IMG/VR virus record: IMGVR_UViG_3300022698_000267
Coordinates: 124,001 to 188,000 of that record
Direction: 5' to 3' (one strand)
DNA length: 64,000 bases
Shown: positions 3,867 to 57,681 of the stretch, piece after piece
Numbering within the stretch: position 1 is the stretch's first letter
Layout of the letters: every line of letters starts with the position of its first letter
Notes under the pieces: generated by a model
What the model saw: the letters and a program-made list of their open reading frames with translations, nothing else
Told to the model about the DNA's origin: nothing
Databases searched by the model: none
Made by a program: the position numbers and the translations under genes

Positions 3867-3944
3867 TGCGTCTGTAGCTGAGAGGTTCAGCGGTGGACTC
3901 TAAATCCACGTCAACGTAGGTTCGAATCCTACCAGACGCACCCA
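3867..3944 (+). tRNA. amber suppressor tRNA, anticodon CTA
   Basis: Acceptor GCGTCTG/CAGACGC, D stem GCTG/CAGC, anticodon stem GTGGA/TCCAC with loop CT-CTA-AA, T arm GTAGG-TTCGAAT-CCTAC. Confidence 0.9.
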
Positions 3945-8520: not shown

Positions 8521-8549
8521 TTGACATTTTTATTCATTTCCTATATAAT
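8521..8549 (+). promoter_or_regulatory. sigma70-type promoter (copy 5)
   Basis: TTGACA-17-TATAAT, then TTTAAGTGGTTGGGGAAA leader. Confidence 0.85.
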
Positions 8550-12514: not shown

Positions 12515-12543
12515 TTGACATTTTGTTCAAAATAATATATAAT
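12515..12543 (+). promoter_or_regulatory. sigma70-type promoter (copy 9)
   Basis: TTGACA-17-TATAAT. Confidence 0.85.
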
Positions 12544-14809: not shown

Positions 14810-15180
14810 TGGCAAAATCAAGTATGAAGGATATTGTTAAAGCAATTCAAGAAGGTTACTACGAAAGCAAAGTTCCTTATCCTGGATCGAAACCTTTAAA
14901 GCCAAAACCTCTTCTTGGAAAAGAATACAATGAATTGAATAAAAAGGCTCTTAAAATCTATGAAGGTTTAATATCAGAGCACAACGAGAAAGTTCTGGTC
15001 TATCGAAAAGAACAAGCCAGATTAGCCAAGGAATTTCGTGAAGATGCTCTCGAGTATGTTGGATTAACTGGTCATTTGAAAGCTGATAAGGCTTTCGAAT
15101 TGGCTTGGGATAAAGGGCATAGTTCAGGACTTTATGAAGTATTAACAAATCTGGAAGAACTAGCGGAGCTTTTGATATGA
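14809..15180 (+). CDS. hypothetical protein
   Basis: Coupled start; AWDKGHSSG motif. Confidence 0.7.
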   Translation: MAKSSMKDIVKAIQEGYYESKVPYPGSKPLKPKPLLGKEYNELNKKALKIYEGLISEHNEKVLVYRKEQARLAKEFREDALEYVGLTGHLKADKAFELAWDKGHSSGLYEVLTNLEELAELLI

Positions 15181-15473
15181 ACAAGGCCTTTACATCTCCT
15201 GAGGAAGTAATAGCTTATCTTACTGAATGTACGTTGGCAACGGTTATTACAATGGCGTCTAAAAAAAGACGTTCGCAGAATGAATTTAATCGTCAAATAA
15301 GTATTGCTCAAACTGGAATAGATGCTTTAATACAGTTTAAAGTTCCTATTCCACTTAATTCAGGCTATGGAAGAGTTGATGTTGTTCTTAATGATTACAA
15401 ACAATCTGTTAAGGATTGGGTTGTTAGTAAGATGGAGGAGTGGCCGAGTCAGGTCAAGGCAGCAGTTTGCTAA
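15177..15473 (+). CDS. hypothetical protein, paralog of 16044-16310; 3' end overlaps tRNA-Ser
   Basis: AYLTECTLATV.TMA.KKR shared with 16044. Confidence 0.7.
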   Translation: MNKAFTSPEEVIAYLTECTLATVITMASKKRRSQNEFNRQISIAQTGIDALIQFKVPIPLNSGYGRVDVVLNDYKQSVKDWVVSKMEEWPSQVKAAVC

Positions 15474-15541: not shown

Positions 15542-15570
15542 TTGACATTTTCATTCATTTCCTATATAAT
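15542..15570 (+). promoter_or_regulatory. sigma70-type promoter (copy 12)
   Basis: TTGACA-17-TATAAT; nearly identical to copy 5. Confidence 0.85.
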
Positions 15571-16043: not shown

Positions 16044-16310
16044 ATGCACTTTTATCATATAGCTTCTTCAGAAGATGCATTGGCCTATTTGCTAGATTGT
16101 ACTTTGGCTACTGTGGAAACAATGGCTGAAAAGAAGAGGATTCCTAAGTATGAATATGAACGTCATGTTGGAATAGCACAGAGGAATTTGGAATTGTGTA
16201 GGAAGTTCGATTGTAATATTGCTGGAACCAGAGGACAGAAGGTGATGGAAGAGTTTAATGGTGATGTTTCAGAATATGGACTTTCTATTCAAATACAAAC
16301 TAATACTTGA
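16044..16310 (+). CDS. hypothetical protein, paralog of 15177
   Basis: AYLLDCTLATVETMAEKKR. Confidence 0.7.
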   Translation: MHFYHIASSEDALAYLLDCTLATVETMAEKKRIPKYEYERHVGIAQRNLELCRKFDCNIAGTRGQKVMEEFNGDVSEYGLSIQIQTNT

Positions 16311-16335
16311 CAAAACCTTTCAAATACACTATAAT
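16307..16335 (+). promoter_or_regulatory. sigma70-type promoter (copy 13) driving a candidate ncRNA
   Basis: TTGACA-17-TATAAT; boxA-like TGTTCTTTGAAAA at 16357-16369. Confidence 0.8.
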
Positions 16336-16365
16336 AGTATAAGAAGTTGGAATTTTTGTTCTTTG

Positions 16366-16683
16366 AAAAAGGAAGTTAAGCTGGAGAAAGCGACAATTGT
16401 GAAACGATGCACTTAGAGTCGAAGTAGCTTTGCAGCTTTAATTGATGGGATTCCCCCGGTTAGACCCCCTTGTCCGTCCACAACTGGTGGACGCGGCGGC
16501 TGACGGTCCTGGATGAAGAACAGCCGCCCTTTTTGGGTTCCGGGAATTGCTGGAATTTGCCAGTGTATAAAGCGGTTTTGGTTCTGAAGCCCAACGGTAC
16601 CCATACGTGAATATGATAAGACATCCGGAGTCTTAACTTAATGAACAAGTCAAATAATTGGCCTCCAGTTTAACTTCCTTTTT
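16366..16683 (+). ncRNA. candidate large structured ncRNA (about 318 nt)
   Basis: 21-bp terminal stem 16366-16386/16663-16683 with one G-U; several internal GC hairpins; no credible ORF. Confidence 0.7.
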
Positions 16684-16697
16684 GAATGAACAATTAT

Positions 16698-16772
16698 CGC
16701 GGGTTAGCCAAGAGGTAAGGCACCAGACTCATATTCTGGAGATCGTGGGTTCGATTCCCACACCCGCAACCA
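16698..16772 (+). tRNA. tRNA-Met(CAT), initiator-like acceptor
   Basis: C1-A72 mismatch (CGCGGGT/ACCCGCA), loop CT-CAT-AT, CCA. Confidence 0.9.
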
Positions 16773-16818
16773 AATTTTTATACCTTCATTAAAATTCTCA
16801 AAAATCAGTAAATAATAC

Positions 16819-30736: not shown

Positions 30737-30765
30737 TTGACAAAATCGGTTGCAGATTATATAAT
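30737..30765 (+). promoter_or_regulatory. sigma70-type promoter (copy 23)
   Basis: TTGACA-17-TATAAT. Confidence 0.85.
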
Positions 30766-30817
30766 ACGTTTAAGTGGTTGGGGAAATGGTTAAAATTTTA
30801 AAAGGGGGGTAGTTAAA

Positions 30818-31093
30818 ATGATCGAGAAAATCCAGAGATATTTCGAGTTGAAGGACCAAATCAAAGTTTTGGACGATGAGTTGAAAGCCATTCGAAGTGA
30901 AGTTTCCACCCTATTTGGTGGGGCTAAAGTTGAAATCGAAGTCGACGGTTCCAAGGTCCGTTGCCAAACCAAAAAACGTTCCACCAAAAGTTGTGATTGG
31001 TCCACGTTTAAGGAAGTCAATGAGCATCTTTACAATCAGATAGTCACCGAATCTGAGTCTTCCTACTATGAGCTGAGAAAATTGGCTCGCTAA
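30818..31093 (+). CDS. paralog of 12927-13202
   Basis: High identity, same stop position (TAA here, TAG there). Confidence 0.8.
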   Translation: MIEKIQRYFELKDQIKVLDDELKAIRSEVSTLFGGAKVEIEVDGSKVRCQTKKRSTKSCDWSTFKEVNEHLYNQIVTESESSYYELRKLAR

Positions 31094-31244
31094 TCATCTC
31101 CTAAAAGTGGTGGTGGGGCAACCCACCATCCACGTTTAACTTGCCGAACAAAGCCTCCAGCGTTTAACTATATGACCAAAGCTACTTTCAGCTATCGAAT
31201 GGAAACGCTTGTCAAAATTATTTGCAAGAAAGTTCAAAAAGTAC

Positions 31245-31273
31245 TTGACAAAATCGGTTGTAGCCTATATAAT
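31245..31273 (+). promoter_or_regulatory. sigma70-type promoter (copy 24)
   Basis: TTGACA-17-TATAAT. Confidence 0.85.
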
Positions 31274-31321
31274 AGAGGCAAGTGGTTAGGGAAATGGTTA
31301 AAATTTAAGGGAGGTAGTAAA

Positions 31322-31807
31322 ATGCAAATACATGAATTGAACAGCGGTTTCTTACGATCACCTGAAGCAATAAATAATGTGCAGATGGTACGAGGTGGAG
31401 CACCGATTGAAGTCAAGAAGGATGATGAGCAGAAGACATACGTTGCAATCGGTAACGTTCAGGGCAGAAGCCTTGCCAAAGGAATGGTCGTGTTGGCCTC
31501 CTACAACGAAGGTAATCAAGGAGCTGACTTGGTTGAGGTGCTAGGGTTCACAAGTGATAAGGAACACTATGGTGAGGGTGGTGTTGCCTTTGAATCAGCA
31601 AAAGAAATGCTCAAACATTATGGTGTAAAGAGCCTTCAAGAGCTGGAAGACCTGCAGGACAAGAATGAGTATGGGTACCACTCTTATTTAGTTGTTCGGG
31701 ATTTGAACGATGACGAAGAAGGTGCCTGGTATTACCTCTACGAAGGTCGATGGGCAAGGGGTTCCGGTGCGGAGAAATTATCCTTCGTCAGAATGAATTT
31801 ACAGTAA
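31322..31807 (+). CDS. hypothetical protein
   Basis: GGAGG RBS behind promoter. Confidence 0.7.
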   Translation: MQIHELNSGFLRSPEAINNVQMVRGGAPIEVKKDDEQKTYVAIGNVQGRSLAKGMVVLASYNEGNQGADLVEVLGFTSDKEHYGEGGVAFESAKEMLKHYGVKSLQELEDLQDKNEYGYHSYLVVRDLNDDEEGAWYYLYEGRWARGSGAEKLSFVRMNLQ

Positions 31808-31949
31808 CGATCAGGGGGCTTCGGCCCCCATTTTCATAACCTGCCTGGCGTTTAACTATAAGACCAAAACAGCTAACGGATACTGGAATTTGTACGTCAA
31901 TGATTCCTTGAAATATCAAATACTATTTGCAAGAAAGTTCAAAAAGTAC

Positions 31950-31978
31950 TTGACATTTTGTCTCCAAGACATTATAAT
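31950..31978 (+). promoter_or_regulatory. sigma70-type promoter (copy 25)
   Basis: TTGACA-17-TATAAT. Confidence 0.85.
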
Positions 31979-32227
31979 AGAGGTAAGAGGTTGGGGGAAA
32001 TACTGCTAAAGGGAGATACAAAATGGCAAAGAAATTATTGGTTGATAAGGTAAGGGTGACAGGGAAAGACGAAAATGGCTACCGTGCTATCGAAGTTGAT
32101 AGGGCTGGTGAACCTTTAAGTTTTCCCATTATGTTTTCCGATACAAGCATCTCGCAACAAGGCATTGACAAGCTTATTAAGCTGATAAAGAAAGAAATGG
32201 CCTTAATATAAAAAGTTCAAAAAGTAC

Positions 32228-32256
32228 TTGACAAAACCTCCTCAAGACATTATAAT
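32228..32256 (+). promoter_or_regulatory. sigma70-type promoter (copy 26)
   Basis: TTGACA-17-TATAAT. Confidence 0.85.
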
Positions 32257-32298
32257 AGAGGTAAGAGGTTGGGGAAATAGAAAAGAGGGGGAAATAAA

Positions 32299-32535
32299 AT
32301 GGAGCAAGTTATAGAGAATTTAGAAGTACAGGGAATTACCTGCAGGGCCAACGTAATTACCGAACATGGTGACTTTGAAGTGGTTGGGGTTATCGCCGGT
32401 AACGAAGTTGATCAATTAAGGCTTGAAACCATTCTCGAGAACAGGAAAGCGGAATTTGATTTTGAGAACCTTGTTGAGAGAAGGCTCATTGAAGAAGCAG
32501 AGGAAGATTATCAAGAACCGGACGATTGGTACTAA
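32299..32535 (+). CDS. small acidic hypothetical protein
   Basis: GAGGGGG RBS behind promoter. Confidence 0.65.
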   Translation: MEQVIENLEVQGITCRANVITEHGDFEVVGVIAGNEVDQLRLETILENRKAEFDFENLVERRLIEEAEEDYQEPDDWY

Positions 32536-32745
32536 TAATCTAATGGGGGCTTCGGCCCCCAAAGGAGGTATAAAAATGTTCGAGTCGACTCCGTGGTGGT
32601 TAATTTTGGTAGAAATTTCTGCTGGTGGTATTTGGTGTGTAGCAGTAACCTACTACCTTATTAAAATGTGCAGGGCAGTTTCGAGTTAAAATCATAGGGG
32701 GGCTTAAAAAGCCCCCATTTCTTTGCAAGAAAGTTCAAAAAGTAC

Positions 32746-32774
32746 TTGACATTTCTACCATAATCCGTTATAAT
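32746..32774 (+). promoter_or_regulatory. sigma70-type promoter (copy 27)
   Basis: TTGACA-17-TATAAT. Confidence 0.85.
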
Positions 32775-34135: not shown

Positions 34136-37100
34136 GTGATGTCACTTGATGTTAATATTCGTCTTCAGGATAAGCTTGAGAGATCTACCATTTTTAATCA
34201 CAGTCTTAGAGCTTTTCTATTATCACTCCTAATTGTGCTAGGGTTGTACAATCTGAATCTATTTCATCTAACGGGATCACTTATTCCTGTAATAATATCA
34301 ATGTCTTTGTTTCTACTGACTTGGAACACTCGTAATTTCATCAATAATCCTTACATTACTTTTATGGGGATGTCTTGTTTTTTCATAGGTTTGTTTTCAC
34401 TTGGTCATATTGTATTCTATCATGGTGCAAATCTTATAGTACCTATCGACGCTACCAGGTTGGTACGAGTAACAGGATTATTTGCAGATATAATACAAGG
34501 ATTTTCTTTTTTACTAGCACCATTATTCTTTGTTGCTAGAGTGAAATTTAGAATTCTATTTATTATAATTTCTGTTTTTCTACTATCAATGTTGTACTTT
34601 TCTATTTCGATTGATCCAGTATTCAAGTATTACATTGTTTTTAATTTTACCAGTATACAGATATTTATGGTACAGGCAGTACTATTAATTTGTGCTTTAT
34701 TCTTGACATTTAGAATAAGAGAGGCATTTGATAAAAAAACCTTCTACTATCTTCTAGCTTCCATGGTATGTTGTTTAATTTCTGGAATCTCCTATGTGTT
34801 AAATGACCCATTTACAACATATCATGCTATAATTACAATCGTCTTTAATATTCTGACTCTTTTATTTTTATATGACGCTATTATCACTACTGTTTTACTA
34901 AATCCTTATTCCAGTTTAGCTCAGAGTCTAATTACAAGTAAGAAATTGATAAATAATTTAGATTCTATGTATACTAATCTATTTGAAAATATAAATGCTG
35001 GTGTAGCTATATTTAGACCAGAACATGGTAATTTCACTTTGATTTCTATTAATAGAACGGCTTTGGAACTAGATGATCTTGATATTAGGGAGGTATTGGG
35101 TCGTAAAGTAACGGAAATTTGGCCTTCTGTAAAAGAATATGGTATATACGAAGCATTTGAGCACGTTCGAGATACTGGAGATTCTGTGGAATGGCCCACT
35201 TCTTTATATGAGGATGAGAGAATAAGGGCATGGAGAGAAAGTTTTATATATCAACTAGAATCTGGTTTACTAGTGTCGGTATATACAGATAGAACAGATG
35301 AGAAAGAACAGGAAGAGAAATTATTAGAAAGTGAGAGAAGATATAGAACAGTAGCCGAATTTACATACGATTTGGAATATTGGGTTGCTCCTGATGGTTC
35401 ATTTCTTTATATATCTCCGGCATGTGAGAGAATAACGGGGTATACGGTCGAAGAGTTCATGAATGATCCTGAATTAATGGATTCTATAATTTATCCGGAG
35501 GATAGGTTTAAATCTTGTTCTATGAACTCTAAAGATGATGGAACTCTTAATGTAAATTCCACAGAGTTTCGAATAAAGACTAAAAATCATCTGACTAAAT
35601 GGATAGGACATATTTGCATGAACATCTACGATGAAGATGGCACCTATCTGGGAATTCGAGGTAGTTCCAGAGATATTACAGGTAAAAAGGAAGCTGAATT
35701 GGAGGTACTAAGAAGTAAAGCTCTTTTTGAAACCCTTTTTGATGCTCTTTCCATACCTATCTTTCGTAAAGATTTGGAAGGTCATTACGTAATGTTCAAT
35801 AAGGCTTTTTGTAATTTCTTCGAAAGAGATAAGGAGGAATTACAAGGTATTTCAGTCTATGATTTACATACTAAAGAAGTTGCTGATATTTGTATGAATA
35901 GAGATAAAGCTTTGCTGCTATCTGGAGATTCTATACAATCATATACTATTGGAGTGAGGACTAAAAACGGTCTTAGGCAGGTCATTATTAGAAAGTCACT
36001 TTTGAAGGATCATGATGATGTTATAATTGGCTTTGTAGGAGGTGTTTTCGATATTACTAAATTAAATCAATTACAGAATCAATTAATGTCTGAGAAATTA
36101 CTTCATGAAGAAGCACAGAGAGTGGCTAAATTGGGTCATTGGGAATTTGTTAATGGTGATAAGTTTCCTAATTGGTCTGATCAGGTTTTCGAAATATTTG
36201 GGGTATCCAAGACTGCAAAAGGGTTATCTATTGAAGATTGGAAGACCATAATAGACCCTAGAGACTACGATATGGTCATAGATGCTTTTAATACGTGTAG
36301 ATTAGAAAATAGGTCCTTTGAAATAGAATTCAGGGCCATTAAATTTGATACTAAAGAACCAAGATGGTTGTATACTATTGGACGTTGTGTAGAAGATACC
36401 GAACCTAAAAGGGTTTATGGAATCGTTCAGGATATTACAGATTACAAGGAAGCACAGATCTCCTTACATTCTACAGAATTTAAATTCAAAACGTTGATAG
36501 ATAATCTGAATGTTGGGATATACAGTTGTACTGTTGGAGAAAAAGACACAAAGTTTATTGAGGTTAATGATGCTTTAGTTAGACTATTGGGTGCTAAGAA
36601 TAAACAACAATTGTATAAGTTACGACCTAAAGACTTCTGGCTAAATCCTGAAAAACGTGATCTACTTTCGTTTAGACTTTTAAAATATGGTAAAATCCGC
36701 AATATGGAGCTACAATTAAGGACTCTAGATGGTTCTAAAATTACAGGTTTAGTATCTGGTGTTGTTGTCCACGATGATGAATCTAAACCCATTCGCACTG
36801 ATATGATACTGGAAGATATTACACAGAGAAGAAACCTGGAGATACAGTTACAACACGCTGTTAAAATGGAGGCAGTTGGTAGATTTGCTAGTAAATTGTC
36901 GCATGACTTTAATAATCTATTGAGTATTCTACAGGGCTATTCAGAGATACTAAAGAAGGAGTTACCGGAGGGTCAAAATCGTCAGAGAGCAGAGTTAATA
37001 CATAAGTCTTCCATCAATGCTCAGAAGTTAATATCCAGGCTTCTAAAGTTTAGTCGTAAAGAGGTCCTGGAGGTTCATAATGTCAACATACAGAAGTTCT

Positions 37101-38011
37101 TAGATGTGTTCTATACATCAGTCAAAGGATTCCTATCTGAAAATATACAACTAAAATTTATATCAGAAATTGAAAATACTTATTGTAATATGGACATAGC
37201 CCAGATGGAGCAGGTATTAATGAATATAATCGTTAATGCTAAAGACGCTATGCCAGATGGAGGTTCGTTACTTATAGAATGCATTTCTATCAATGTTGAT
37301 GATGAATTCACCTCTTCGAAACCCCATCTTAATTCTGGAGGTTACGTTTGTATTAAAATTGGAGACACTGGTCATGGAATGTCTGATGAAACAAGATTAA
37401 ATATCTTCGAACCATTCTTTACTACTAAAGCTAAAGGAACGGGATTAGGTTTATCCACAGCCTATGGAATAATAAAACAACATGGTGGTGATATATGGGT
37501 CTACAGTGAATTAGGGAAGGGCACAACCTTCAAGATTTATCTACCCATTGTTTCTAAAGACTCCTATGCACCTAAAGTAGATGAAAAGATTCAAATACTG
37601 GATACGAGTTTACATGGAGATGAGAATTTGATAATTGTAGAAGACGATCGTGCCCTGCTTACAATGTTCACAGATATATTGAGTTCTTCTGGATACTATA
37701 CTATGCCGTTCACTGATGGAGATCAATGTCTTGAAGCTATGGTCTTGACGGACGTTATTCCTGATCTGGTCGTTAGCGATTATGTTATGCCAGGAGGGTA
37801 TAATGGACAGCAATTATGTGAAGAGTTGTTGGAGTTATATCCTGATATTAGAATAATACTAATGTCTGGATATTCAGAGAAGTTAAATGGAAGTACTAGG
37901 GTTTCAGGGAAGATCAAAGCTTATCTGGAGAAACCCTTTTCGAATAGAGAATTGTTACAGCTTGTTAGAACTCTTTTAGATGAAAGAAGGAGGTCAATAG
38001 ATGAGAAGTAA
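34136..38011 (+). CDS. hybrid sensor histidine kinase: membrane (MASE3-like) region, several PAS domains, HisKA, HATPase, REC
   Basis: About 8 TM segments; YISPACERITGY; SHDFNNLL H-box; NIIVNAKDAM, DTGHGM, FFTTK.KGTGLGL; VEDD..SDYVMP..KPF. Confidence 0.92.
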   Translation: MMSLDVNIRLQDKLERSTIFNHSLRAFLLSLLIVLGLYNLNLFHLTGSLIPVIISMSLFLLTWNTRNFINNPYITFMGMSCFFIGLFSLGHIVFYHGANLIVPIDATRLVRVTGLFADIIQGFSFLLAPLFFVARVKFRILFIIISVFLLSMLYFSISIDPVFKYYIVFNFTSIQIFMVQAVLLICALFLTFRIREAFDKKTFYYLLASMVCCLISGISYVLNDPFTTYHAIITIVFNILTLLFLYDAIITTVLLNPYSSLAQSLITSKKLINNLDSMYTNLFENINAGVAIFRPEHGNFTLISINRTALELDDLDIREVLGRKVTEIWPSVKEYGIYEAFEHVRDTGDSVEWPTSLYEDERIRAWRESFIYQLESGLLVSVYTDRTDEKEQEEKLLESERRYRTVAEFTYDLEYWVAPDGSFLYISPACERITGYTVEEFMNDPELMDSIIYPEDRFKSCSMNSKDDGTLNVNSTEFRIKTKNHLTKWIGHICMNIYDEDGTYLGIRGSSRDITGKKEAELEVLRSKALFETLFDALSIPIFRKDLEGHYVMFNKAFCNFFERDKEELQGISVYDLHTKEVADICMNRDKALLLSGDSIQSYTIGVRTKNGLRQVIIRKSLLKDHDDVIIGFVGGVFDITKLNQLQNQLMSEKLLHEEAQRVAKLGHWEFVNGDKFPNWSDQVFEIFGVSKTAKGLSIEDWKTIIDPRDYDMVIDAFNTCRLENRSFEIEFRAIKFDTKEPRWLYTIGRCVEDTEPKRVYGIVQDITDYKEAQISLHSTEFKFKTLIDNLNVGIYSCTVGEKDTKFIEVNDALVRLLGAKNKQQLYKLRPKDFWLNPEKRDLLSFRLLKYGKIRNMELQLRTLDGSKITGLVSGVVVHDDESKPIRTDMILEDITQRRNLEIQLQHAVKMEAVGRFASKLSHDFNNLLSILQGYSEILKKELPEGQNRQRAELIHKSSINAQKLISRLLKFSRKEVLEVHNVNIQKFLDVFYTSVKGFLSENIQLKFISEIENTYCNMDIAQMEQVLMNIIVNAKDAMPDGGSLLIECISINVDDEFTSSKPHLNSGGYVCIKIGDTGHGMSDETRLNIFEPFFTTKAKGTGLGLSTAYGIIKQHGGDIWVYSELGKGTTFKIYLPIVSKDSYAPKVDEKIQILDTSLHGDENLIIVEDDRALLTMFTDILSSSGYYTMPFTDGDQCLEAMVLTDVIPDLVVSDYVMPGGYNGQQLCEELLELYPDIRIILMSGYSEKLNGSTRVSGKIKAYLEKPFSNRELLQLVRTLLDERRRSIDEK

Positions 38012-44171: not shown

Positions 44172-46622
44172 CTAAATAACATTTACATCACAAACTTCTC
44201 CATTGACGTTATCCTTATCATTCATATTCACAATTTTTGTACCAATAGAATATCTATTACGTATTGGTATATCTGAAATTTTCATCGACATTGTTGCATT
44301 TCCAGAAGTTAAGATTGTTACCCTGGAATCCTCTGTTACACACACGGCTCCTGCTATTTCTTTTTCTGGTTCATCCACTTTTAATAATGATAAACCAACT
44401 GACCCTCTGTTGGCAATTTTGAATTGCTCAATTTTTACTCTTCTTCCAAATCCATTTCTGGATACAGAAAATATTGAATGTTCATCGTCGTATACGACTT
44501 TTCCCATACTTATGATTTCATCACTGCCTTTCAAATTCATCCCTAAGAATCCCATAGCAGATCTGGTGGTTTTTATCTCTTTTATTTTCCCACAATTTAG
44601 GATTAAAACCATTGAATTTCTACTAACAAACATTATGTAGTCAGAGTCTGTAACTTCTTCCACTCCTAATAATTTATCATTATCCCTTAATGTTATAGCT
44701 TCAAGTCCTTGAACTACTTTTTTGCCTCGAAATAATGACATTGGAGATTTCTTTATGTAGCCATTTTTTGTTGCAAAGAAAAGATTTGTATCTTTTGCCT
44801 CTTCTGGTTTATAATGGGTTATGGAAGTTACGAATTCGGAATTTGTTTCAAATGGGTTTTTTCCAACTTTTTGTATATCGATTAAACCAGATATATGTTT
44901 TCCTTTAGCAGATCTACTCATTAGTGGAATATCTTCAACATTTAATATGAAGTATTTTCCAGTATTTGTAAATAGAAGTAGTTCATCATTTGAATCCACA
45001 GATATCATTGTTTTAATTAGATCTGAACCATGAACTATCCCTTTTCCACCCCTTTTTTGTGTTGGATACTCTGAAGCATTGGTGGTTTTAATATACCCTC
45101 TAGATGTTAGGGTAATTATTAATTTGGCAGAATCTAGTAATATTTTTTCTTTTTGGTCTTCAACTTCCTCTTCATTTAGGATTTTGGTTCTTCTTGGTCT
45201 TCCGTACTCATTCTTTATTTCCAACATTTCATCATTTATGGTTTTATCTAATTGCTCTTCCTCATCAATAATAGAATTAAGTTCCTTAACTCTTTTTGTA
45301 GCATTTTCATGCTCTTCTTTTATCTTCTTGTTTTCTATTTTTGTGAGTCTTTGTAAGGAAAGTCCTAAGATGGCTTTTGTTTGTTTCTCACTGGTTTTAA
45401 ATTTCTTTTGTATCTTTTGTTTTGCTATTTCAGAATCATCTGATTTTCTAACAATAGCAATAATTTCGTCAATATTTTTTGCTGCAATCTGCAAACCTTC
45501 TAATATATGCATTCTTTGCTGCAATTTTCTGGCTTCAAAGGCAGATCTCCTAAGAATTATATCTCTTCTGTGATCTATAAATGCTTCTATATAGTCTTTC
45601 AAATTTATTTGCTTTGGTTTATTGTCACTAACACATAGCATGTTAATGCTAAATGATGCTTCCAATGGAGTGTGTTTGTACAAACCATCTACGATGACTT
45701 TTTCCTGACTATTTCTCTTTAAACTAAGAACAATCCTGATTCCATTTCTATCCGATTCATCCCTAATCTCAGAAATTTCGGAAATACCCTTCTCAGTTAC
45801 ATAATGTCCTATTTTTTCAATCAAAGTAGTTTTATTAACAGAATATGGAATTTCCTTTATAACAATAGACTTGGTTCCATCTGGATTTGTTTCTATGTTA
45901 ACAACTCCATTGATTTTTATACTTCCACGTCCAGTTTTATATGTTTCTGAGATGGAGTCATTTACAAAAATAACTCCTCCAGTTGGAAAGTCAGGACCCT
46001 TGACAATTTTGCATAAATCTTCTATTGTTATTGCAGGATTTTTAATAGTAGCTATTATTGCATCTACTAATTCATTCAGGTTATGTGGTGGAATACTGGT
46101 GGCCATCCCTACTGCTATTCCAGAGGTTCCATTTAAAAGGAGATTAGGTATTCTGGTCGGAAGTATTTCTGGTTCTACAGTGCTACTATCGTAATTTTCT
46201 CTATAATCTACGGTTTCTTCGTTGAGATCCTTTGTAAATTCATCTGCTATTTTTTGTAATCTGCATTCAGTATATCTCATTGCTGCAGGTTTATCACCAT
46301 CTACAGACCCTATATTTCCTTGACCATCAACCAAGGCACTTTGCATGTTGAAATCTTGTGCCATTCGTATCAGGGCATCATATATGGCTCCGTCACTATG
46401 TGGATGGTATTTACCTATAACATCACCAACTATTCTAGCGGATTTTTTAAAAGGCTTGTCGTATCTATTGCCCAATTCTGTCATTGCATAGATAATTCTT
46501 CTGTGTACTGGTTTTAACCCATCTCTAATACTTGGAATAGTCCTTCCTACAATTACATTCATCGAGTAGTTCAGATACGATTTTTCAATTTCTTCTTTTA
46601 TGTCGACGTCGGTACTAGGCAT
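44172..46622 (-). CDS. gyrA: DNA gyrase subunit A
   Basis: [25 protein letters not shown] catalytic Tyr, GyrA box QKRGGKG, C-terminal repeats. Confidence 0.95.
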
Positions 46623-52229: not shown

Positions 52230-52340
52230 TGTGGGTATAGCTTAAAGGTAAAGCGCCTGATCTAGTGAAAGAATGTAATGGTTGGTCACCTTGCCCTTTC
52301 TCGGTCAGGAGAAAATGTTCGAATCATTTGCCCACAACCA
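52230..52340 (+). ncRNA. tRNA-like RNA with a 44-nt extension in place of the anticodon loop
   Basis: TGTGGGT/GCCCACA + A + CCA, D arm GCTT/AAGC, CCTGA/TCAGG stem, T arm AAATG-TTCGAAT-CATTT. Confidence 0.75.
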
Positions 52341-55320: not shown

Positions 55321-57681
55321 ATGGAAGAGCGATACGACGGAAATAACATAATTGTTTTAGAGGGTCTAGAAGCTGTCAAAAAGCGTCCAGCTATGTATAT
55401 TGGCAGTACAGACTATCGTGGTGTTCATCATCTGGTTTATGAGGTTCTAGATAATAGTATTGATGAAACTATGGTTGGTTATTGTGATCATATAAAAGTT
55501 CTAATTCACAAAGACAACAGTATTACTGTAATAGATAATGGTCGAGGAATTCCGGTAGATAAACATCCTACTGAAAATATGTCATCTTTAGAAGTTGTTA
55601 TGACAAAATTGCATGCAGGTGGAAAATTTGATCACAGAAGTTATAAAGTTTCTGGTGGACTTCATGGAGTTGGAATTTCTGTAGTTAATGCACTTTCTGA
55701 ACAATTAAAGGTTAGTGTTAGAAGGGATGGAAATTTATTTATACAGAATTATGAAAAAGGATTTCCTGTCACCGAATTAAAAAAAGGAAAAAAGACCAAT
55801 AAAAGAGGAACTACCATAAAATTTCGACCAGATGAAGACATTTTTGGTTCGTACAAAATAGATTTTAATATGCTATCCGAGAGGATGAAGGAACTAGCTT
55901 ATTTAAATGGTGGTTTACAGTTAGAACTTTTTGATGAACGTACTGGTGCAGAATCTTCTTTTAAATTCGATGGTGGAGTTAATAGTCTACTTAAAAAGTT
56001 GAATGAAGGCAAGAGAAATGTGCATCCAATCATTTATGATTCGGATTCAATGGATTCTGGTCTTTGGATAGAATTTTGTTTCCAATATACAGATGTTTCC
56101 AACACAAGAGTTCTATCTTTTTGCAATAACATTAAGACTCAAGAAGGTGGAACTCACCTCTCTGGTTTTAAAACTGCTTTAACAAGAACATTTAACTCTT
56201 TTATACAAGGTAGTGATTCCGTTGCAAAAAGATTGAAGCAATTTAGAATTAATGGAGAGGACATTCTAGCAGGTTTGTCTGCTATCATTAATGTCAAAGT
56301 GCCGGATCCACAATTTGAAGGACAAACCAAGACAAAGTTGGGAAATAATGATGTTTCTGGAGAGGTTAGATCTTTCGTTGGGGGTAAATTAACCACTTAT
56401 TTAAATGAGAACCCAAAACATGCAAAATCTATTGTAGAAAGATTAATTCAATCTACCAGAGAAAGAGAAGCAGCCAGAAAGGCTAAGGATATTATTAGAA
56501 AGAAATCAGGACTTTCACATCTTCTGATATCCAGTAAATTGGCTGATTGTCGTAGTAAAAATGTTAAAAAGCGAGAACTATTTATTGTTGAAGGTGATAG
56601 TGCTGGTGGTTCTGCTAAACAAGGTAGAAATCCAGAATTTCAGGCTATATTGCCATTAAGAGGTAAAGTTTTAAATATTGAAAAAGCAGATACACACAAG
56701 ATTATTAAAAACAAAGAGATTCAAAATTTAATTGCTAGTCTAGGTGTGGGTTTTGGTGATGACACTGATGTCAATAAACTTCGATATGACAAAGTCATTA
56801 TTATGACAGATGCTGATATTGATGGAGCTCATATTAGAACTTTGCTTCTAACTTTCTTTTTTAGGCAATTTGTTGAGATTATAGAGAATGGACATCTGTA
56901 TATATCACAACCACCTTTATATAGAGTCTATAAGAAAGGATTTGAAAAATTTCTTTCTGATGAGGCTGATTTAGAAGAATTTCTATTGGAGGATTCTATA
57001 GATTTTCTTGCTGTAACAAATGGAAAAAAGACTTATACAAAGAAAACTTTACAAAATTTCTTACTTCGAATTAGAGAACTTATGAGACTTTTTTCTAGAG
57101 CATCCGATTTTGGTATACCAAAAGAATTGTTTAAACTGATTCTACTATATGAAGACCTTTCAGTTAATTTAAATTCTAAATTTGAACCATTTAAGAAGTA
57201 TATGAAAAAGAATGGTTTTTTTCTAGAATTAAAATCGAATGTTATAGAAGATGAAGATCTACCTTACTTTCTATTACAATATGGAAGAAAGAAGGTTAAA
57301 ATTCCAATTGATTTCTTCAGATCCAATTTGTATAGGAATTCCTACAAGATTTTGAGTCGAATAAAACTTGATAGTCCGACATTACAATTTAAACTTCCTT
57401 CAATAGAAGAAGAATTAAGTTACGAAGAATTGTACGTCAAAAGTTTAAATCTTCTGCGTTCTAAGTATTCTATTCAACGTTATAAAGGTTTGGGGGAAAT
57501 GAATCCAGAACAGCTTTGGAAAACCACTATGAATGCAAGAACTAGAAATCTTCTACGAGTAACAATACCAGATGCAGAAGCAGCAGATAGATCTTTTAGT
57601 ATGTTAATGGGTGGTAATGTTGAAATCAGGAGGAATTTCATTGAGAGCTACTCCTCCAATTTTGAATTTCTAGATATTTAA
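55321..57681 (+). CDS. gyrB: DNA gyrase subunit B
   Basis: LEAVKKRPAMYIG, EVLDNSIDE, LHAGGKF, VEGDSAGGSAKQGR, MTDADIDG, RYKGLGEMN. Confidence 0.95.
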   Translation: MEERYDGNNIIVLEGLEAVKKRPAMYIGSTDYRGVHHLVYEVLDNSIDETMVGYCDHIKVLIHKDNSITVIDNGRGIPVDKHPTENMSSLEVVMTKLHAGGKFDHRSYKVSGGLHGVGISVVNALSEQLKVSVRRDGNLFIQNYEKGFPVTELKKGKKTNKRGTTIKFRPDEDIFGSYKIDFNMLSERMKELAYLNGGLQLELFDERTGAESSFKFDGGVNSLLKKLNEGKRNVHPIIYDSDSMDSGLWIEFCFQYTDVSNTRVLSFCNNIKTQEGGTHLSGFKTALTRTFNSFIQGSDSVAKRLKQFRINGEDILAGLSAIINVKVPDPQFEGQTKTKLGNNDVSGEVRSFVGGKLTTYLNENPKHAKSIVERLIQSTREREAARKAKDIIRKKSGLSHLLISSKLADCRSKNVKKRELFIVEGDSAGGSAKQGRNPEFQAILPLRGKVLNIEKADTHKIIKNKEIQNLIASLGVGFGDDTDVNKLRYDKVIIMTDADIDGAHIRTLLLTFFFRQFVEIIENGHLYISQPPLYRVYKKGFEKFLSDEADLEEFLLEDSIDFLAVTNGKKTYTKKTLQNFLLRIRELMRLFSRASDFGIPKELFKLILLYEDLSVNLNSKFEPFKKYMKKNGFFLELKSNVIEDEDLPYFLLQYGRKKVKIPIDFFRSNLYRNSYKILSRIKLDSPTLQFKLPSIEEELSYEELYVKSLNLLRSKYSIQRYKGLGEMNPEQLWKTTMNARTRNLLRVTIPDAEAADRSFSMLMGGNVEIRRNFIESYSSNFEFLDI

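What the first reader, a model, noticed from the sequence alone, without database searches (positions are those of the whole stretch)
16307..16690. About 318-nt multi-helix ncRNA with its own promoter and a boxA-like element
Seen: a consensus promoter, TGTTCTTTGAAAA (boxA-like), then a 21-bp terminal stem. It encloses CAATTGT/ATAATTG, a GC domain (TTCCC..ACCC/GGGT..GGGAA) with hairpins CGTCCAC/GTGGACG and GGCGGCTG/CAGCCGCC, plus CTGG/CCAG and AAGAC/GTCTT. tRNA-fMet follows. It lacks RNase P (GAGGAAAGTCC), tmRNA and SRP signatures. Known: large ornate phage ncRNAs such as GOLLD and ROOL occur next to tRNAs but are longer.
Basis: partly seen in the sequence, partly recalled or inferred. Interest (0 to 1): 0.75.

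Follow-up and report, generated by a model that had tools for sequence, protein, structure and literature searches.

The report
Orphan phage RNA in rRNA-style stalk
A jumbo phage carries a roughly 300-base, GC-rich, non-coding stretch laid out like a miniature ribosomal-RNA operon (strong promoter, boxA signal, long processing stem, then a tRNA), so it is probably a new stable phage RNA; no relative or transcript could be found to prove it.

Summary
The window is part of a 273.5-kb jumbo-phage record with about 20 tRNAs.

A perfect sigma-70 promoter (16307-16335) is followed by TGTTCTTTGAAAA. This is not a separate element. It forms the base of a 31-bp closing stem (16356-16386 / 16663-16693, 21 bp uninterrupted). 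The stem encloses 276 nt with stops in all six frames. A tRNA-Met(CAU) with a C1xA72 mismatch starts 4 nt after the stem.

The same design occurs in a bacterial 16S rRNA operon from a metagenome: boxA lies inside the processing stem, with the same G.G mismatch. Two metagenomic GOLLD RNAs also have a promoter-plus-boxA leader and a C1xA72 tRNA-Met just downstream.

The RNA matches no Rfam family, even at E<=10. No homologue was found in phage, IMG/VR, metagenome or genome collections, and no sequencing run was listed.

The interior alone folds no better than shuffled sequence (z = -0.5). A genuine GOLLD core gives only z = -1.3, so this test has little power.

Best reading: a real, orphan, stable phage ncRNA made and excised the way rRNA is. 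It sits in the GOLLD/ROOL genomic niche but belongs to neither family. Its function is unknown, and covariation could not be tested.

The parts
16307..16335 (+). Sigma-70 promoter, TTGACA-17 nt-TATAAT, a perfect match. Transcription is inferred to start near 16342-16344.
   Evidence: 12 of 12. It is one of about 20 identical-consensus promoters in genome 113-157 kb.
16357..16369 (+). boxA element TGTTCTTTGAAAA, likely a Nus-factor antitermination signal. It forms the base of the stalk's 5' arm.
   Evidence: The same 12-mer follows consensus promoters ahead of 16S/23S rRNA, tRNA and GOLLD genes in metagenomes. GTTCTTTGAAAACT is a conserved Mycoplasma primer site (PMC3019172). Its location in the 16S-23S spacer and its identity as that spacer's boxA are from my own knowledge (Harasawa 1993). 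Exact or near copies occur in this genome at the other stable-RNA loci (59921, 60450, 60634).
16356..16386 (+). 5' arm of the 31-bp closing (processing) stalk.
   Evidence: Pairing probability is 0.94-1.0.
16663..16693 (+). 3' arm of the closing stalk. It contains TTTTGAATGAACA, the imperfect complement of boxA, with a G.G mismatch.
   Evidence: The same boxA-to-complement pairing and the same G.G mismatch occur in a bacterial 16S processing stem (L148) and in YrlA-like unit 4 of this phage.
16387..16662 (+). 276-nt interior, the presumed mature RNA body. GC is 48% overall and 58% in the core 16441-16566, against 36% for the genome.
   Evidence: for GC. Stops occur in all six frames. The short ORFs have no Pfam hit. 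No Rfam hit.
16475..16528 (+). Two adjacent G+C-rich hairpins, 16475-16493 and 16495-16528. The second has an 18-nt loop.
   Evidence: Pairing probabilities are 0.82 and 0.93.
16549..16591 (+). Hairpins GCTGG/CCAGT (16549-16564) and GGTTTT/GAAGCC (16574-16591).
   Evidence: Pairing probabilities are 0.87 and 0.69.
16618..16634 (+). Hairpin AAGAC-ATCCGGA-GTCTT. Its palindromic loop UCCGGA is also complementary, with one bulge, to the loop of the 16495-16528 hairpin. That pairing is an inference.
   Evidence: (I8) and direct reading of the sequence. The minimum-free-energy fold does not use this hairpin.
16418..16424 (+). GTCGAAG, a match to the GNCGAAN0-1G motif proposed as the Ro60 contact in bacterial Y RNAs.
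   Evidence: Motif from PMC4201824. Expected 0.07 times per 300 nt in this genome.
16698..16772 (+). Co-transcribed tRNA-Met(CAU) with the C1xA72 mismatch.
16337..16350 (+). Possible outer pairing of the transcript's 5' end with 16770-16783, just after the tRNA (12 of 14 pairs).
   Evidence: I4. Weak; it may be chance.

Best explanation
This is a phage gene for a stable non-coding RNA, organised like a miniature ribosomal-RNA operon.

Shown:
- A consensus early promoter drives an untranslated transcript.
- The leader carries a bona fide boxA sequence.
- boxA plus the next 18 nt pair with the 3' flank to form a 31-bp stalk around a 276-nt GC-rich body.
- An initiator-like tRNA-Met follows 4 nt after the stalk.

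Inferred:
- Host Nus factors bind boxA. This makes RNA polymerase resistant to Rho on the untranslated RNA and helps the two stalk arms meet, as in 16S rRNA synthesis.
- Host RNase III cuts the stalk. This releases a roughly 290-300-nt RNA closed by a helical stub, while RNase P and 3' trimming release the tRNA.

The body is an orphan: it belongs to no known RNA family. By genomic niche it is an analogue of the large phage RNAs GOLLD and ROOL, which sit in tRNA islands (the two GOLLD loci examined also have a boxA leader and a downstream tRNA-Met). My best guess is that it acts as an abundant structural or scaffold RNA in the phage's take-over of translation or RNA metabolism.
For: - Perfect promoter.
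- The boxA 12-mer is the one found in rRNA and tRNA operon leaders.
- A natural 16S operon (L148) has boxA inside its processing stem, paired to TTTTGAAGGAGCAA with the same G.G mismatch.
- The stalk is the longest long-range inverted repeat in the genome. Numbers 2, 4 and 14 are the closing stems of the phage's YrlA-like RNAs. Shuffled genomes reach at most 20 bp.
- Core GC is 58%, equal to the phage tRNAs (57%) and far above the genome's 36%.
- The region is non-coding.
- GOLLD loci L114 and L116 share the promoter-boxA leader and a C1xA72 tRNA-Met downstream.
- GOLLD and ROOL are known to lie near phage tRNA islands (bioRxiv 10.1101/2024.12.08.627333).
- Bacillus subtilis RNase III excises the SRP RNA precursor from a similar stem. 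This is from my own knowledge (Oguro 1998) and was not checked here.
Against: - The interior alone is no more stable than shuffled sequence (z = -0.53). A real GOLLD core scores only -1.34, so this test is weak.
- There is no homologue, so no covariation.
- The only other copies are 100% identical.
- No transcript data.
- RNase III cleavage and Nus binding are inferred by analogy only.
- The function is a guess from context.
Confidence: 0.6

Rival explanations
1. The interior has no function of its own. The unit is a tRNA-Met operon whose boxA leader and stalk serve only transcription and processing, and the 276 nt are an expanded or captured spacer.
For: - Promoter-boxA leaders directly precede tRNA genes in metagenomic loci L126, L161 and L167.
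- The interior z-score is -0.53.
- No conservation can be shown.
Against: - Spacers in this 36%-GC genome are AT-rich (20-30% in flanking 100-nt windows), whereas the core is 58% GC.
- A stalk that encloses only the spacer and excludes the tRNA has no obvious use for tRNA maturation.
- The other long closing stems in this genome enclose functional-looking RNAs.
Confidence: 0.15
2. It is a giant Y-RNA-like partner of the phage's Ro60 homologue. The closing stem would bind Ro60, and the large body would act as the effector module.
For: - The phage encodes a divergent Ro60/TROVE protein next to six YrlA-like RNAs.
- Unit 4 of that cluster has the same leader, boxA and boxA-complement stalk as this RNA.
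- Long closing stems are the shared hallmark.
- One GNCGAAG motif is present, against 0.07 expected.
Against: - It lacks the RUUACAG motif shared by all six YrlA-like units.
- It has no tRNA-like module and no YrlA hit.
- It lies 80 kb from the Ro60 gene, whereas known Y RNAs lie within about 2 kb of it and are 80-130 nt long (PMC4201824).
- The complex-prediction job was not folded and gives no evidence.
Confidence: 0.12
3. It is a DNA-level element: a MITE-like insertion or a recombination or replication hairpin bounded by 31-bp terminal inverted repeats.
For: - The inverted repeats flank a block of atypical GC.
- A second locus has similar repeat ends.
Against: - There is a single copy in the genome and no other copy anywhere.
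- The repeat starts 21 nt after a perfect -10 box and contains a transcription signal used by rRNA operons.
- No transposase or target duplication was seen.
Confidence: 0.04
4. It is a degenerate tmRNA-like or mRNA-like RNA, or it encodes a micro-peptide.
For: Region 16410-16440 reads ...V-A-L-Q-L-stop and resembles at nucleotide level the ...VALAA-stop tag end of Bacillus tmRNA. That resemblance is from memory only. The genome has no tmRNA.
Against: - There is no tRNA-like domain, T-loop or 3' CCA.
- ARAGORN and all tmRNA models are silent, even at E<=10.
- There is no room for pseudoknot 1.
- No Shine-Dalgarno sequence precedes any short ORF, and the short ORFs have no Pfam hit.
Confidence: 0.04

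Closest known systems
GOLLD (RF02032) and ROOL (RF03087) large ornate phage RNAs
   Same: Both families are phage-encoded, untranslated and sit in or beside a tRNA island. Two GOLLD genes examined here have a consensus promoter plus the same boxA leader and a C1xA72 tRNA-Met immediately downstream.
   Different: This RNA has no sequence or structure match, even at E<=10. It is 280-320 nt, against roughly 600-900 nt. It lacks the many GNRA-capped CGCAAG hairpins seen in GOLLD. It is enclosed by a boxA-containing stalk, whereas the GOLLD loci are not.
Bacterial rRNA operon leader: boxA plus the 16S/23S processing stalk
   Same: The order is promoter, boxA, long helix between the 5' and 3' flanks, then a tRNA after the enclosed RNA. 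boxA is inside the helix, with an identical G.G mismatch.
   Different: The enclosed RNA is 276 nt and is not rRNA (no SSU, LSU or 5S hit). The unit is encoded by a phage.
Bacterial and phage Y RNAs (YrlA, RF02553) with Ro60
   Same: The 5' and 3' ends form a long closing stem. This RNA shares its leader and stalk base with one of the phage's own YrlA-like genes. It contains one GNCGAAG motif.
   Different: It has no tRNA-like module, it is three times larger, it is not adjacent to the Ro60 gene, and it lacks the RUUACAG motif of the phage's six units.
Stable RNAs of unknown function in the phage T4 tRNA cluster (species 1 and 2; own knowledge, not checked here)
   Same: They are non-tRNA stable RNAs co-transcribed within a phage tRNA cluster.
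   Different: Sequence relationship was not tested. The T4 RNAs are shorter, and I know of no boxA stalk around them.

Membership tests
GOLLD RNA (RF02032) | Match to the conserved 3' domain covariance model (gathering score 150 bits) | tested here: not met
   No hit at E<=10 in 16200-16800. The same scan method scores true GOLLDs at 211-213 bits.
GOLLD RNA (RF02032) | Phage or prophage location near tRNA genes | tested here: met
   19 tRNAs lie in window 3.8-19 kb and a tRNA-Met starts 4 nt downstream. The two GOLLD loci have the same leader and tRNA-Met arrangement.
ROOL RNA (RF03087) | Match to the family covariance model | tested here: not met
   No hit at gathering score or at E<=10.
Y RNA / YrlA (RF02553) | Long stem formed by the 5' and 3' ends | tested here: met
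   31-bp closing stem.
Y RNA / YrlA (RF02553) | GNCGAAN0-1G on the 5' strand near the 5' end (Ro60 contact) | tested here: inconclusive
   GTCGAAG is present at 16418-16424 but lies about 30 nt inside the stalk rather than on it. Chance expectation is 0.07.
Y RNA / YrlA (RF02553) | tRNA-like module (T arm, acceptor-like hairpin, D arm) and a covariance-model match | tested here: not met
   No YrlA or extra tRNA hit at E<=10. The phage's real YrlA-like units give 27-37 bits.
Y RNA / YrlA (RF02553) | Encoded within about 2 kb of a Ro60 gene | tested here: not met
   The Ro60-like gene is at genome 61951-63555 and this RNA is at 140.3 kb.
tmRNA | tRNA-like domain with T arm and 3' CCA, plus a tag reading frame | tested here: not met
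   ARAGORN finds none, also at a lowered threshold. No tmRNA family hit, permuted forms included.
RNase P RNA, SRP RNA, 6S RNA | Match to the family models | tested here: not met
   The hairpin loop at 16503-16520 resembles SRP helix 8 by eye only.
rRNA-operon-type transcription unit (an architecture, not an RNA family) | Promoter, boxA and a flank-to-flank processing helix that includes boxA | tested here: met
rRNA-operon-type transcription unit (an architecture, not an RNA family) | Nus-factor binding and RNase III cleavage | not testable with these tools
   Requires biochemistry or RNA end-mapping.

The most novel reading that the evidence does not exclude
The RNA is the founding member of a new class of phage 'ornate' RNA. 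It would be produced by hijacking the host's rRNA synthesis and maturation pathway (boxA/Nus antitermination plus RNase III stalk cleavage) and co-expressed with an initiator-like tRNA. It would act on the ribosome or tRNA pool, or with the phage Ro60/Y-RNA/RtcB system, possibly as a self-assembling RNA like GOLLD and ROOL.
Probability: 0.3. Interest if true: 0.7.

Novelty: new variant of a known kind. Interest (0 to 1): 0.5.

Why it matters
Large structured phage RNAs near tRNA islands (GOLLD, ROOL) form striking RNA-only cages, but their function is unknown.

A third, unrelated and much smaller RNA in the same niche would suggest a common biological role filled by different folds. It would also give a more tractable model of about 300 nt.

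The link to boxA and an rRNA-type stalk shows how phages get long untranslated RNAs made and excised in bacteria. The finding that GOLLD genes also carry boxA leaders is a directly testable lead for that field.

The value is limited for now. The RNA is known from one phage only, with no covariation and no expression data.

Tried and rejected
Family and tmRNA searches
- Rfam at gathering score and at E<=10: only the tRNA matched.
- ARAGORN tmRNA search on the whole genome and on the region at a relaxed threshold: none.

Sequence searches for homologues
- blastn against 50,697 phage records: no match.
- IMG/VR exact-pattern scans found nothing or only chance hits in coding DNA. The patterns were the leader, the tRNA-Met D arm and the big hairpin loop.
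- A scan of the GTDB genome collection for the hairpin loop gave four chance hits inside genes.

Searches through neighbouring genes
- The 88-aa and HD-domain neighbours have only distant, non-syntenic homologues.
- The only syntenic contig is 100% identical.

Searches through related phages
- Terminase relatives reach 76% identity, but on contigs that lack the tRNA region or cannot be searched.
- The two IMG/VR relatives have no tRNAs and no match.

Covariance model
- A single-sequence covariance model of the core (16446-16566) found nothing in 510 kb of held loci or in 36 viral records.

Expression and binding
- No sequencing runs were listed, so no read mapping was possible.
- The complex prediction with the Ro60-like protein was not folded by the tool and gives no evidence either way.

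Readings considered and rejected
- My first reading of the 60-kb cluster as true circularly permuted tRNA genes was replaced by YrlA-like tRNA mimics.
- Permuted tmRNA, SRP helix 8, and 6S or Ms1-like RNA were considered for this RNA and rejected for lack of any model match.

Full report
CONTEXT

The window is bases 124001-188000 of a 273,563-bp IMG/VR virus record estimated 97% complete, with 36% GC. It encodes a major head protein, large terminase and portal, GyrA/GyrB and a large sensor kinase, RtcB and about 20 tRNAs, most of them at window 3.8-19 kb. It is a jumbo phage of a bacterium with sigma-70-type promoters. About 20 perfect TTGACA-17-TATAAT promoters lie in genome 113-157 kb.

THE OBSERVATION

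- The promoter at 16307-16335 matches 12 of 12 positions.
- TGTTCTTTGAAAA is at 16357-16369.
- The terminal stem is 21 uninterrupted pairs (16366-16386 / 16663-16683, spanning 318 nt). It continues outward to 31-nt arms at 90% complementarity, 16356-16386 / 16663-16693.
- The whole element folds at -119.7 kcal/mol with z = -5.6.
- A tRNA-Met(CAU) follows at 16698-16772. It has the C1xA72 mismatch typical of initiator tRNA but not the three G-C pairs in the anticodon stem.

Two corrections are needed.
- The boxA-like sequence is not upstream of the stem. It is the base of the stem's 5' arm.
- The thermodynamic signal comes from the stem. The 276-nt interior alone gives z = -0.53.

I calibrated that second test on a genuine GOLLD core, which gives only z = -1.34. 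The test therefore has little power and neither supports nor refutes an ornate interior.

The 21-bp stem is the longest long-range inverted repeat of the genome. Twelve locally shuffled genomes reached 15-20 bp. Genome-wide it is thus only modestly exceptional. Its position is what makes it hard to call chance: it starts 21 nt after a perfect -10 box and ends 4 nt before a tRNA.

THE REGION IS NON-CODING AND COMPOSITIONALLY RNA-LIKE

- All six frames carry stops.
- The longest ORFs (46-63 aa) have no Pfam match.
- The core 16441-16566 is 58% GC, like the phage tRNAs (mean 57%). The genome is 36% GC, and the flanking spacers fall to 20-30%.

WHAT THE STEM IS

A second exact copy of the 13-mer lies at genome 60450. 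It also starts a long stem whose 3' arm contains the imperfect complement of boxA.

I scanned JGI metagenomes for consensus promoter, 15-25 nt, then TTTGTTCTTTGA. This gave 66 loci. Many are leaders of 16S or 23S rRNA genes or of tRNA genes, and two precede GOLLD RNAs. The motif is therefore a genuine boxA of AT-rich bacteria. GTTCTTTGAAAACT is also a conserved Mycoplasma PCR primer site (PMC3019172). From my own knowledge (Harasawa 1993), that site lies in the 16S-23S spacer and is its boxA.

In the complete rRNA operon on locus L148, the 16S processing helix is formed by the boxA-containing leader and the 3' flank ...TAGTTTTGAAGGAGCAA. It has the same G.G mismatch opposite the boxA G as in the finding and in the 60-kb unit.

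The finding's promoter-boxA-stalk-RNA-tRNA layout is therefore that of an rRNA operon with the 16S gene replaced by a 276-nt RNA. By analogy with rRNA biogenesis, which is established knowledge and was not tested here:
- boxA recruits Nus factors, which suppress Rho termination on untranslated RNA and hold the leader until its 3' partner is made;
- RNase III cuts the stalk.

SEARCH FOR IDENTITY

- No Rfam family matches, even at E<=10.
- ARAGORN finds no tmRNA in the genome.
- A tag-like reading frame at 16410-16440 and an SRP-helix-8-like loop at 16503-16520 are resemblances seen by eye only. No model supports them.

SEARCH FOR RELATIVES

- blastn against phage records found nothing.
- Four IMG/VR pattern scans found nothing relevant.
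- A GTDB genome scan gave only chance hits.
- nhmmer and blastn over all fetched loci found nothing.
- A covariance model of the core found nothing in 510 kb of loci or in 36 viral records.
- Flanking proteins have only distant, non-syntenic relatives.
- Terminase relatives exist at up to 76% identity, but on fragments without the tRNA island or on records the tools could not open.
- The only other copy is identical.
- No sequencing run was listed.

Covariation and expression therefore remain untested.

THE PHAGE'S OTHER STEM-ENCLOSED RNAS

Genome 59.9-61.0 kb carries six tandem tRNA-like RNAs.
- Five are circularly permuted: T arm, acceptor 3' strand with encoded CCA, a short loop, acceptor 5' strand, then D arm.
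- Each is closed by a long stem.
- They give sub-threshold YrlA hits of 27-37 bits, with E down to 7e-6.
- They are followed by a 534-aa protein that Pfam does not recognise. Feature and structure comparison place it with TROVE/Ro60 proteins (score 0.98, TM 0.77-0.86). An ARPP-1 protein follows that.

This is a phage Ro60/Y-RNA system of the kind described by Chen et al. 2014 (PMC4201824).

The finding shares its leader and stalk base with unit 4, and it contains one GNCGAAG motif (expected 0.07). Against membership, it lacks the RUUACAG motif common to all six units, has no tRNA-like module, lies 80 kb from the Ro60 gene and is three times the size of any Y RNA. I therefore rate the 'giant Y RNA' reading at about 0.12.

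NICHE COMPARISON

The two metagenomic GOLLD genes (L114, L116) have the consensus promoter and boxA leader. Each is followed within about 130 nt by a tRNA-Met with C1xA72. GOLLD and ROOL are known to lie near phage tRNA islands, and their function is unknown (bioRxiv 10.1101/2024.12.08.627333).

The finding occupies the same position in an unrelated phage but is not a member of either family. I did not find boxA leaders of GOLLD mentioned in the passages I read.

VERDICT

The most likely reading (0.6) is a genuine, orphan, stable phage ncRNA produced through an rRNA-style boxA/stalk pathway and co-expressed with an initiator-like tRNA. Its function is unknown. My best guess is a scaffold or decoy role in translation or RNA metabolism, analogous to GOLLD/ROOL.

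The main rival (0.15) is that only the leader, stalk and tRNA matter and the interior is spacer.

Interest is moderate. The architecture and the GOLLD parallel are new and testable, but the evidence for a structured, functional interior is single-sequence only.

Noticed in passing
L006:4918-5961 (genome 59917-60960, outside the window): Six tandem tRNA-like RNAs, five of them circularly permuted with an encoded CCA in the acceptor hairpin loop, each closed by a long stem. Four also keep an anticodon arm (GAU, AUG, AGU, CAU), so they mimic tRNA more completely than classical YrlA. All share a 5' motif RUUACAG. They give sub-threshold YrlA hits.
   Followed up: partly
L006:6952-8556 and L006:8572-9582: A 534-aa divergent Ro60/TROVE protein that Pfam misses (structure TM 0.77-0.86 to TROVE proteins) sits directly after the YrlA-like cluster. 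It is followed in the same frame, after a single TAG, by an ARPP-1 protein. With the phage's amber-suppressor tRNA, a read-through fusion is conceivable.
   Followed up: partly
window 3867-3944: A tRNA with anticodon CUA, an amber suppressor that ARAGORN labels Pyl. Long ORFs stop at TAA 78 times, TAG 31 times and TGA 22 times. Nine pairs of long open frames are joined by one TAG. There is no genome-wide recoding.
   Followed up: partly
window 52231-52336: A 106-nt tRNA model hit (48 bits) with an insertion of about 35 nt in the anticodon region. ARAGORN missed it. It may be an intron-containing or disrupted tRNA.
   Followed up: no
genome 113-157 kb, e.g. window 8521-8549, 12515-12543, 15542-15570, 30737-32774: About 20 perfect TTGACA-17-TATAAT promoters, most followed by a conserved leader AAGnGGTTGGGGAAAT. 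This looks like an early-gene promoter and 5'-UTR family.
   Followed up: no
L114:298-1306 and L116:2651-3573 (metagenome loci): GOLLD RNAs are preceded by a consensus promoter and a boxA leader (TTTGTTCTTTGA). A second boxA-like TGTTCTTCAAAA and a C1xA72 tRNA-Met follow them.
   Followed up: partly
window 34136-38011, 44172-46622, 55321-57681, 1298-2293; genome 220391-221575: The phage encodes a 1291-aa MASE3-PAS-HisKA-HATPase-receiver hybrid kinase, GyrA, GyrB, an ADP-ribosyltransferase-like protein and RtcB RNA ligase.
   Followed up: no
window 15177-15473 and 16044-16310: Two paralogous small proteins (98 and 88 aa, shared ...AYL.ECTLATV..MA.KKR... N-terminus) are interleaved with the tRNAs. 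Their relatives occur in small phages next to terminase genes.
   Followed up: partly
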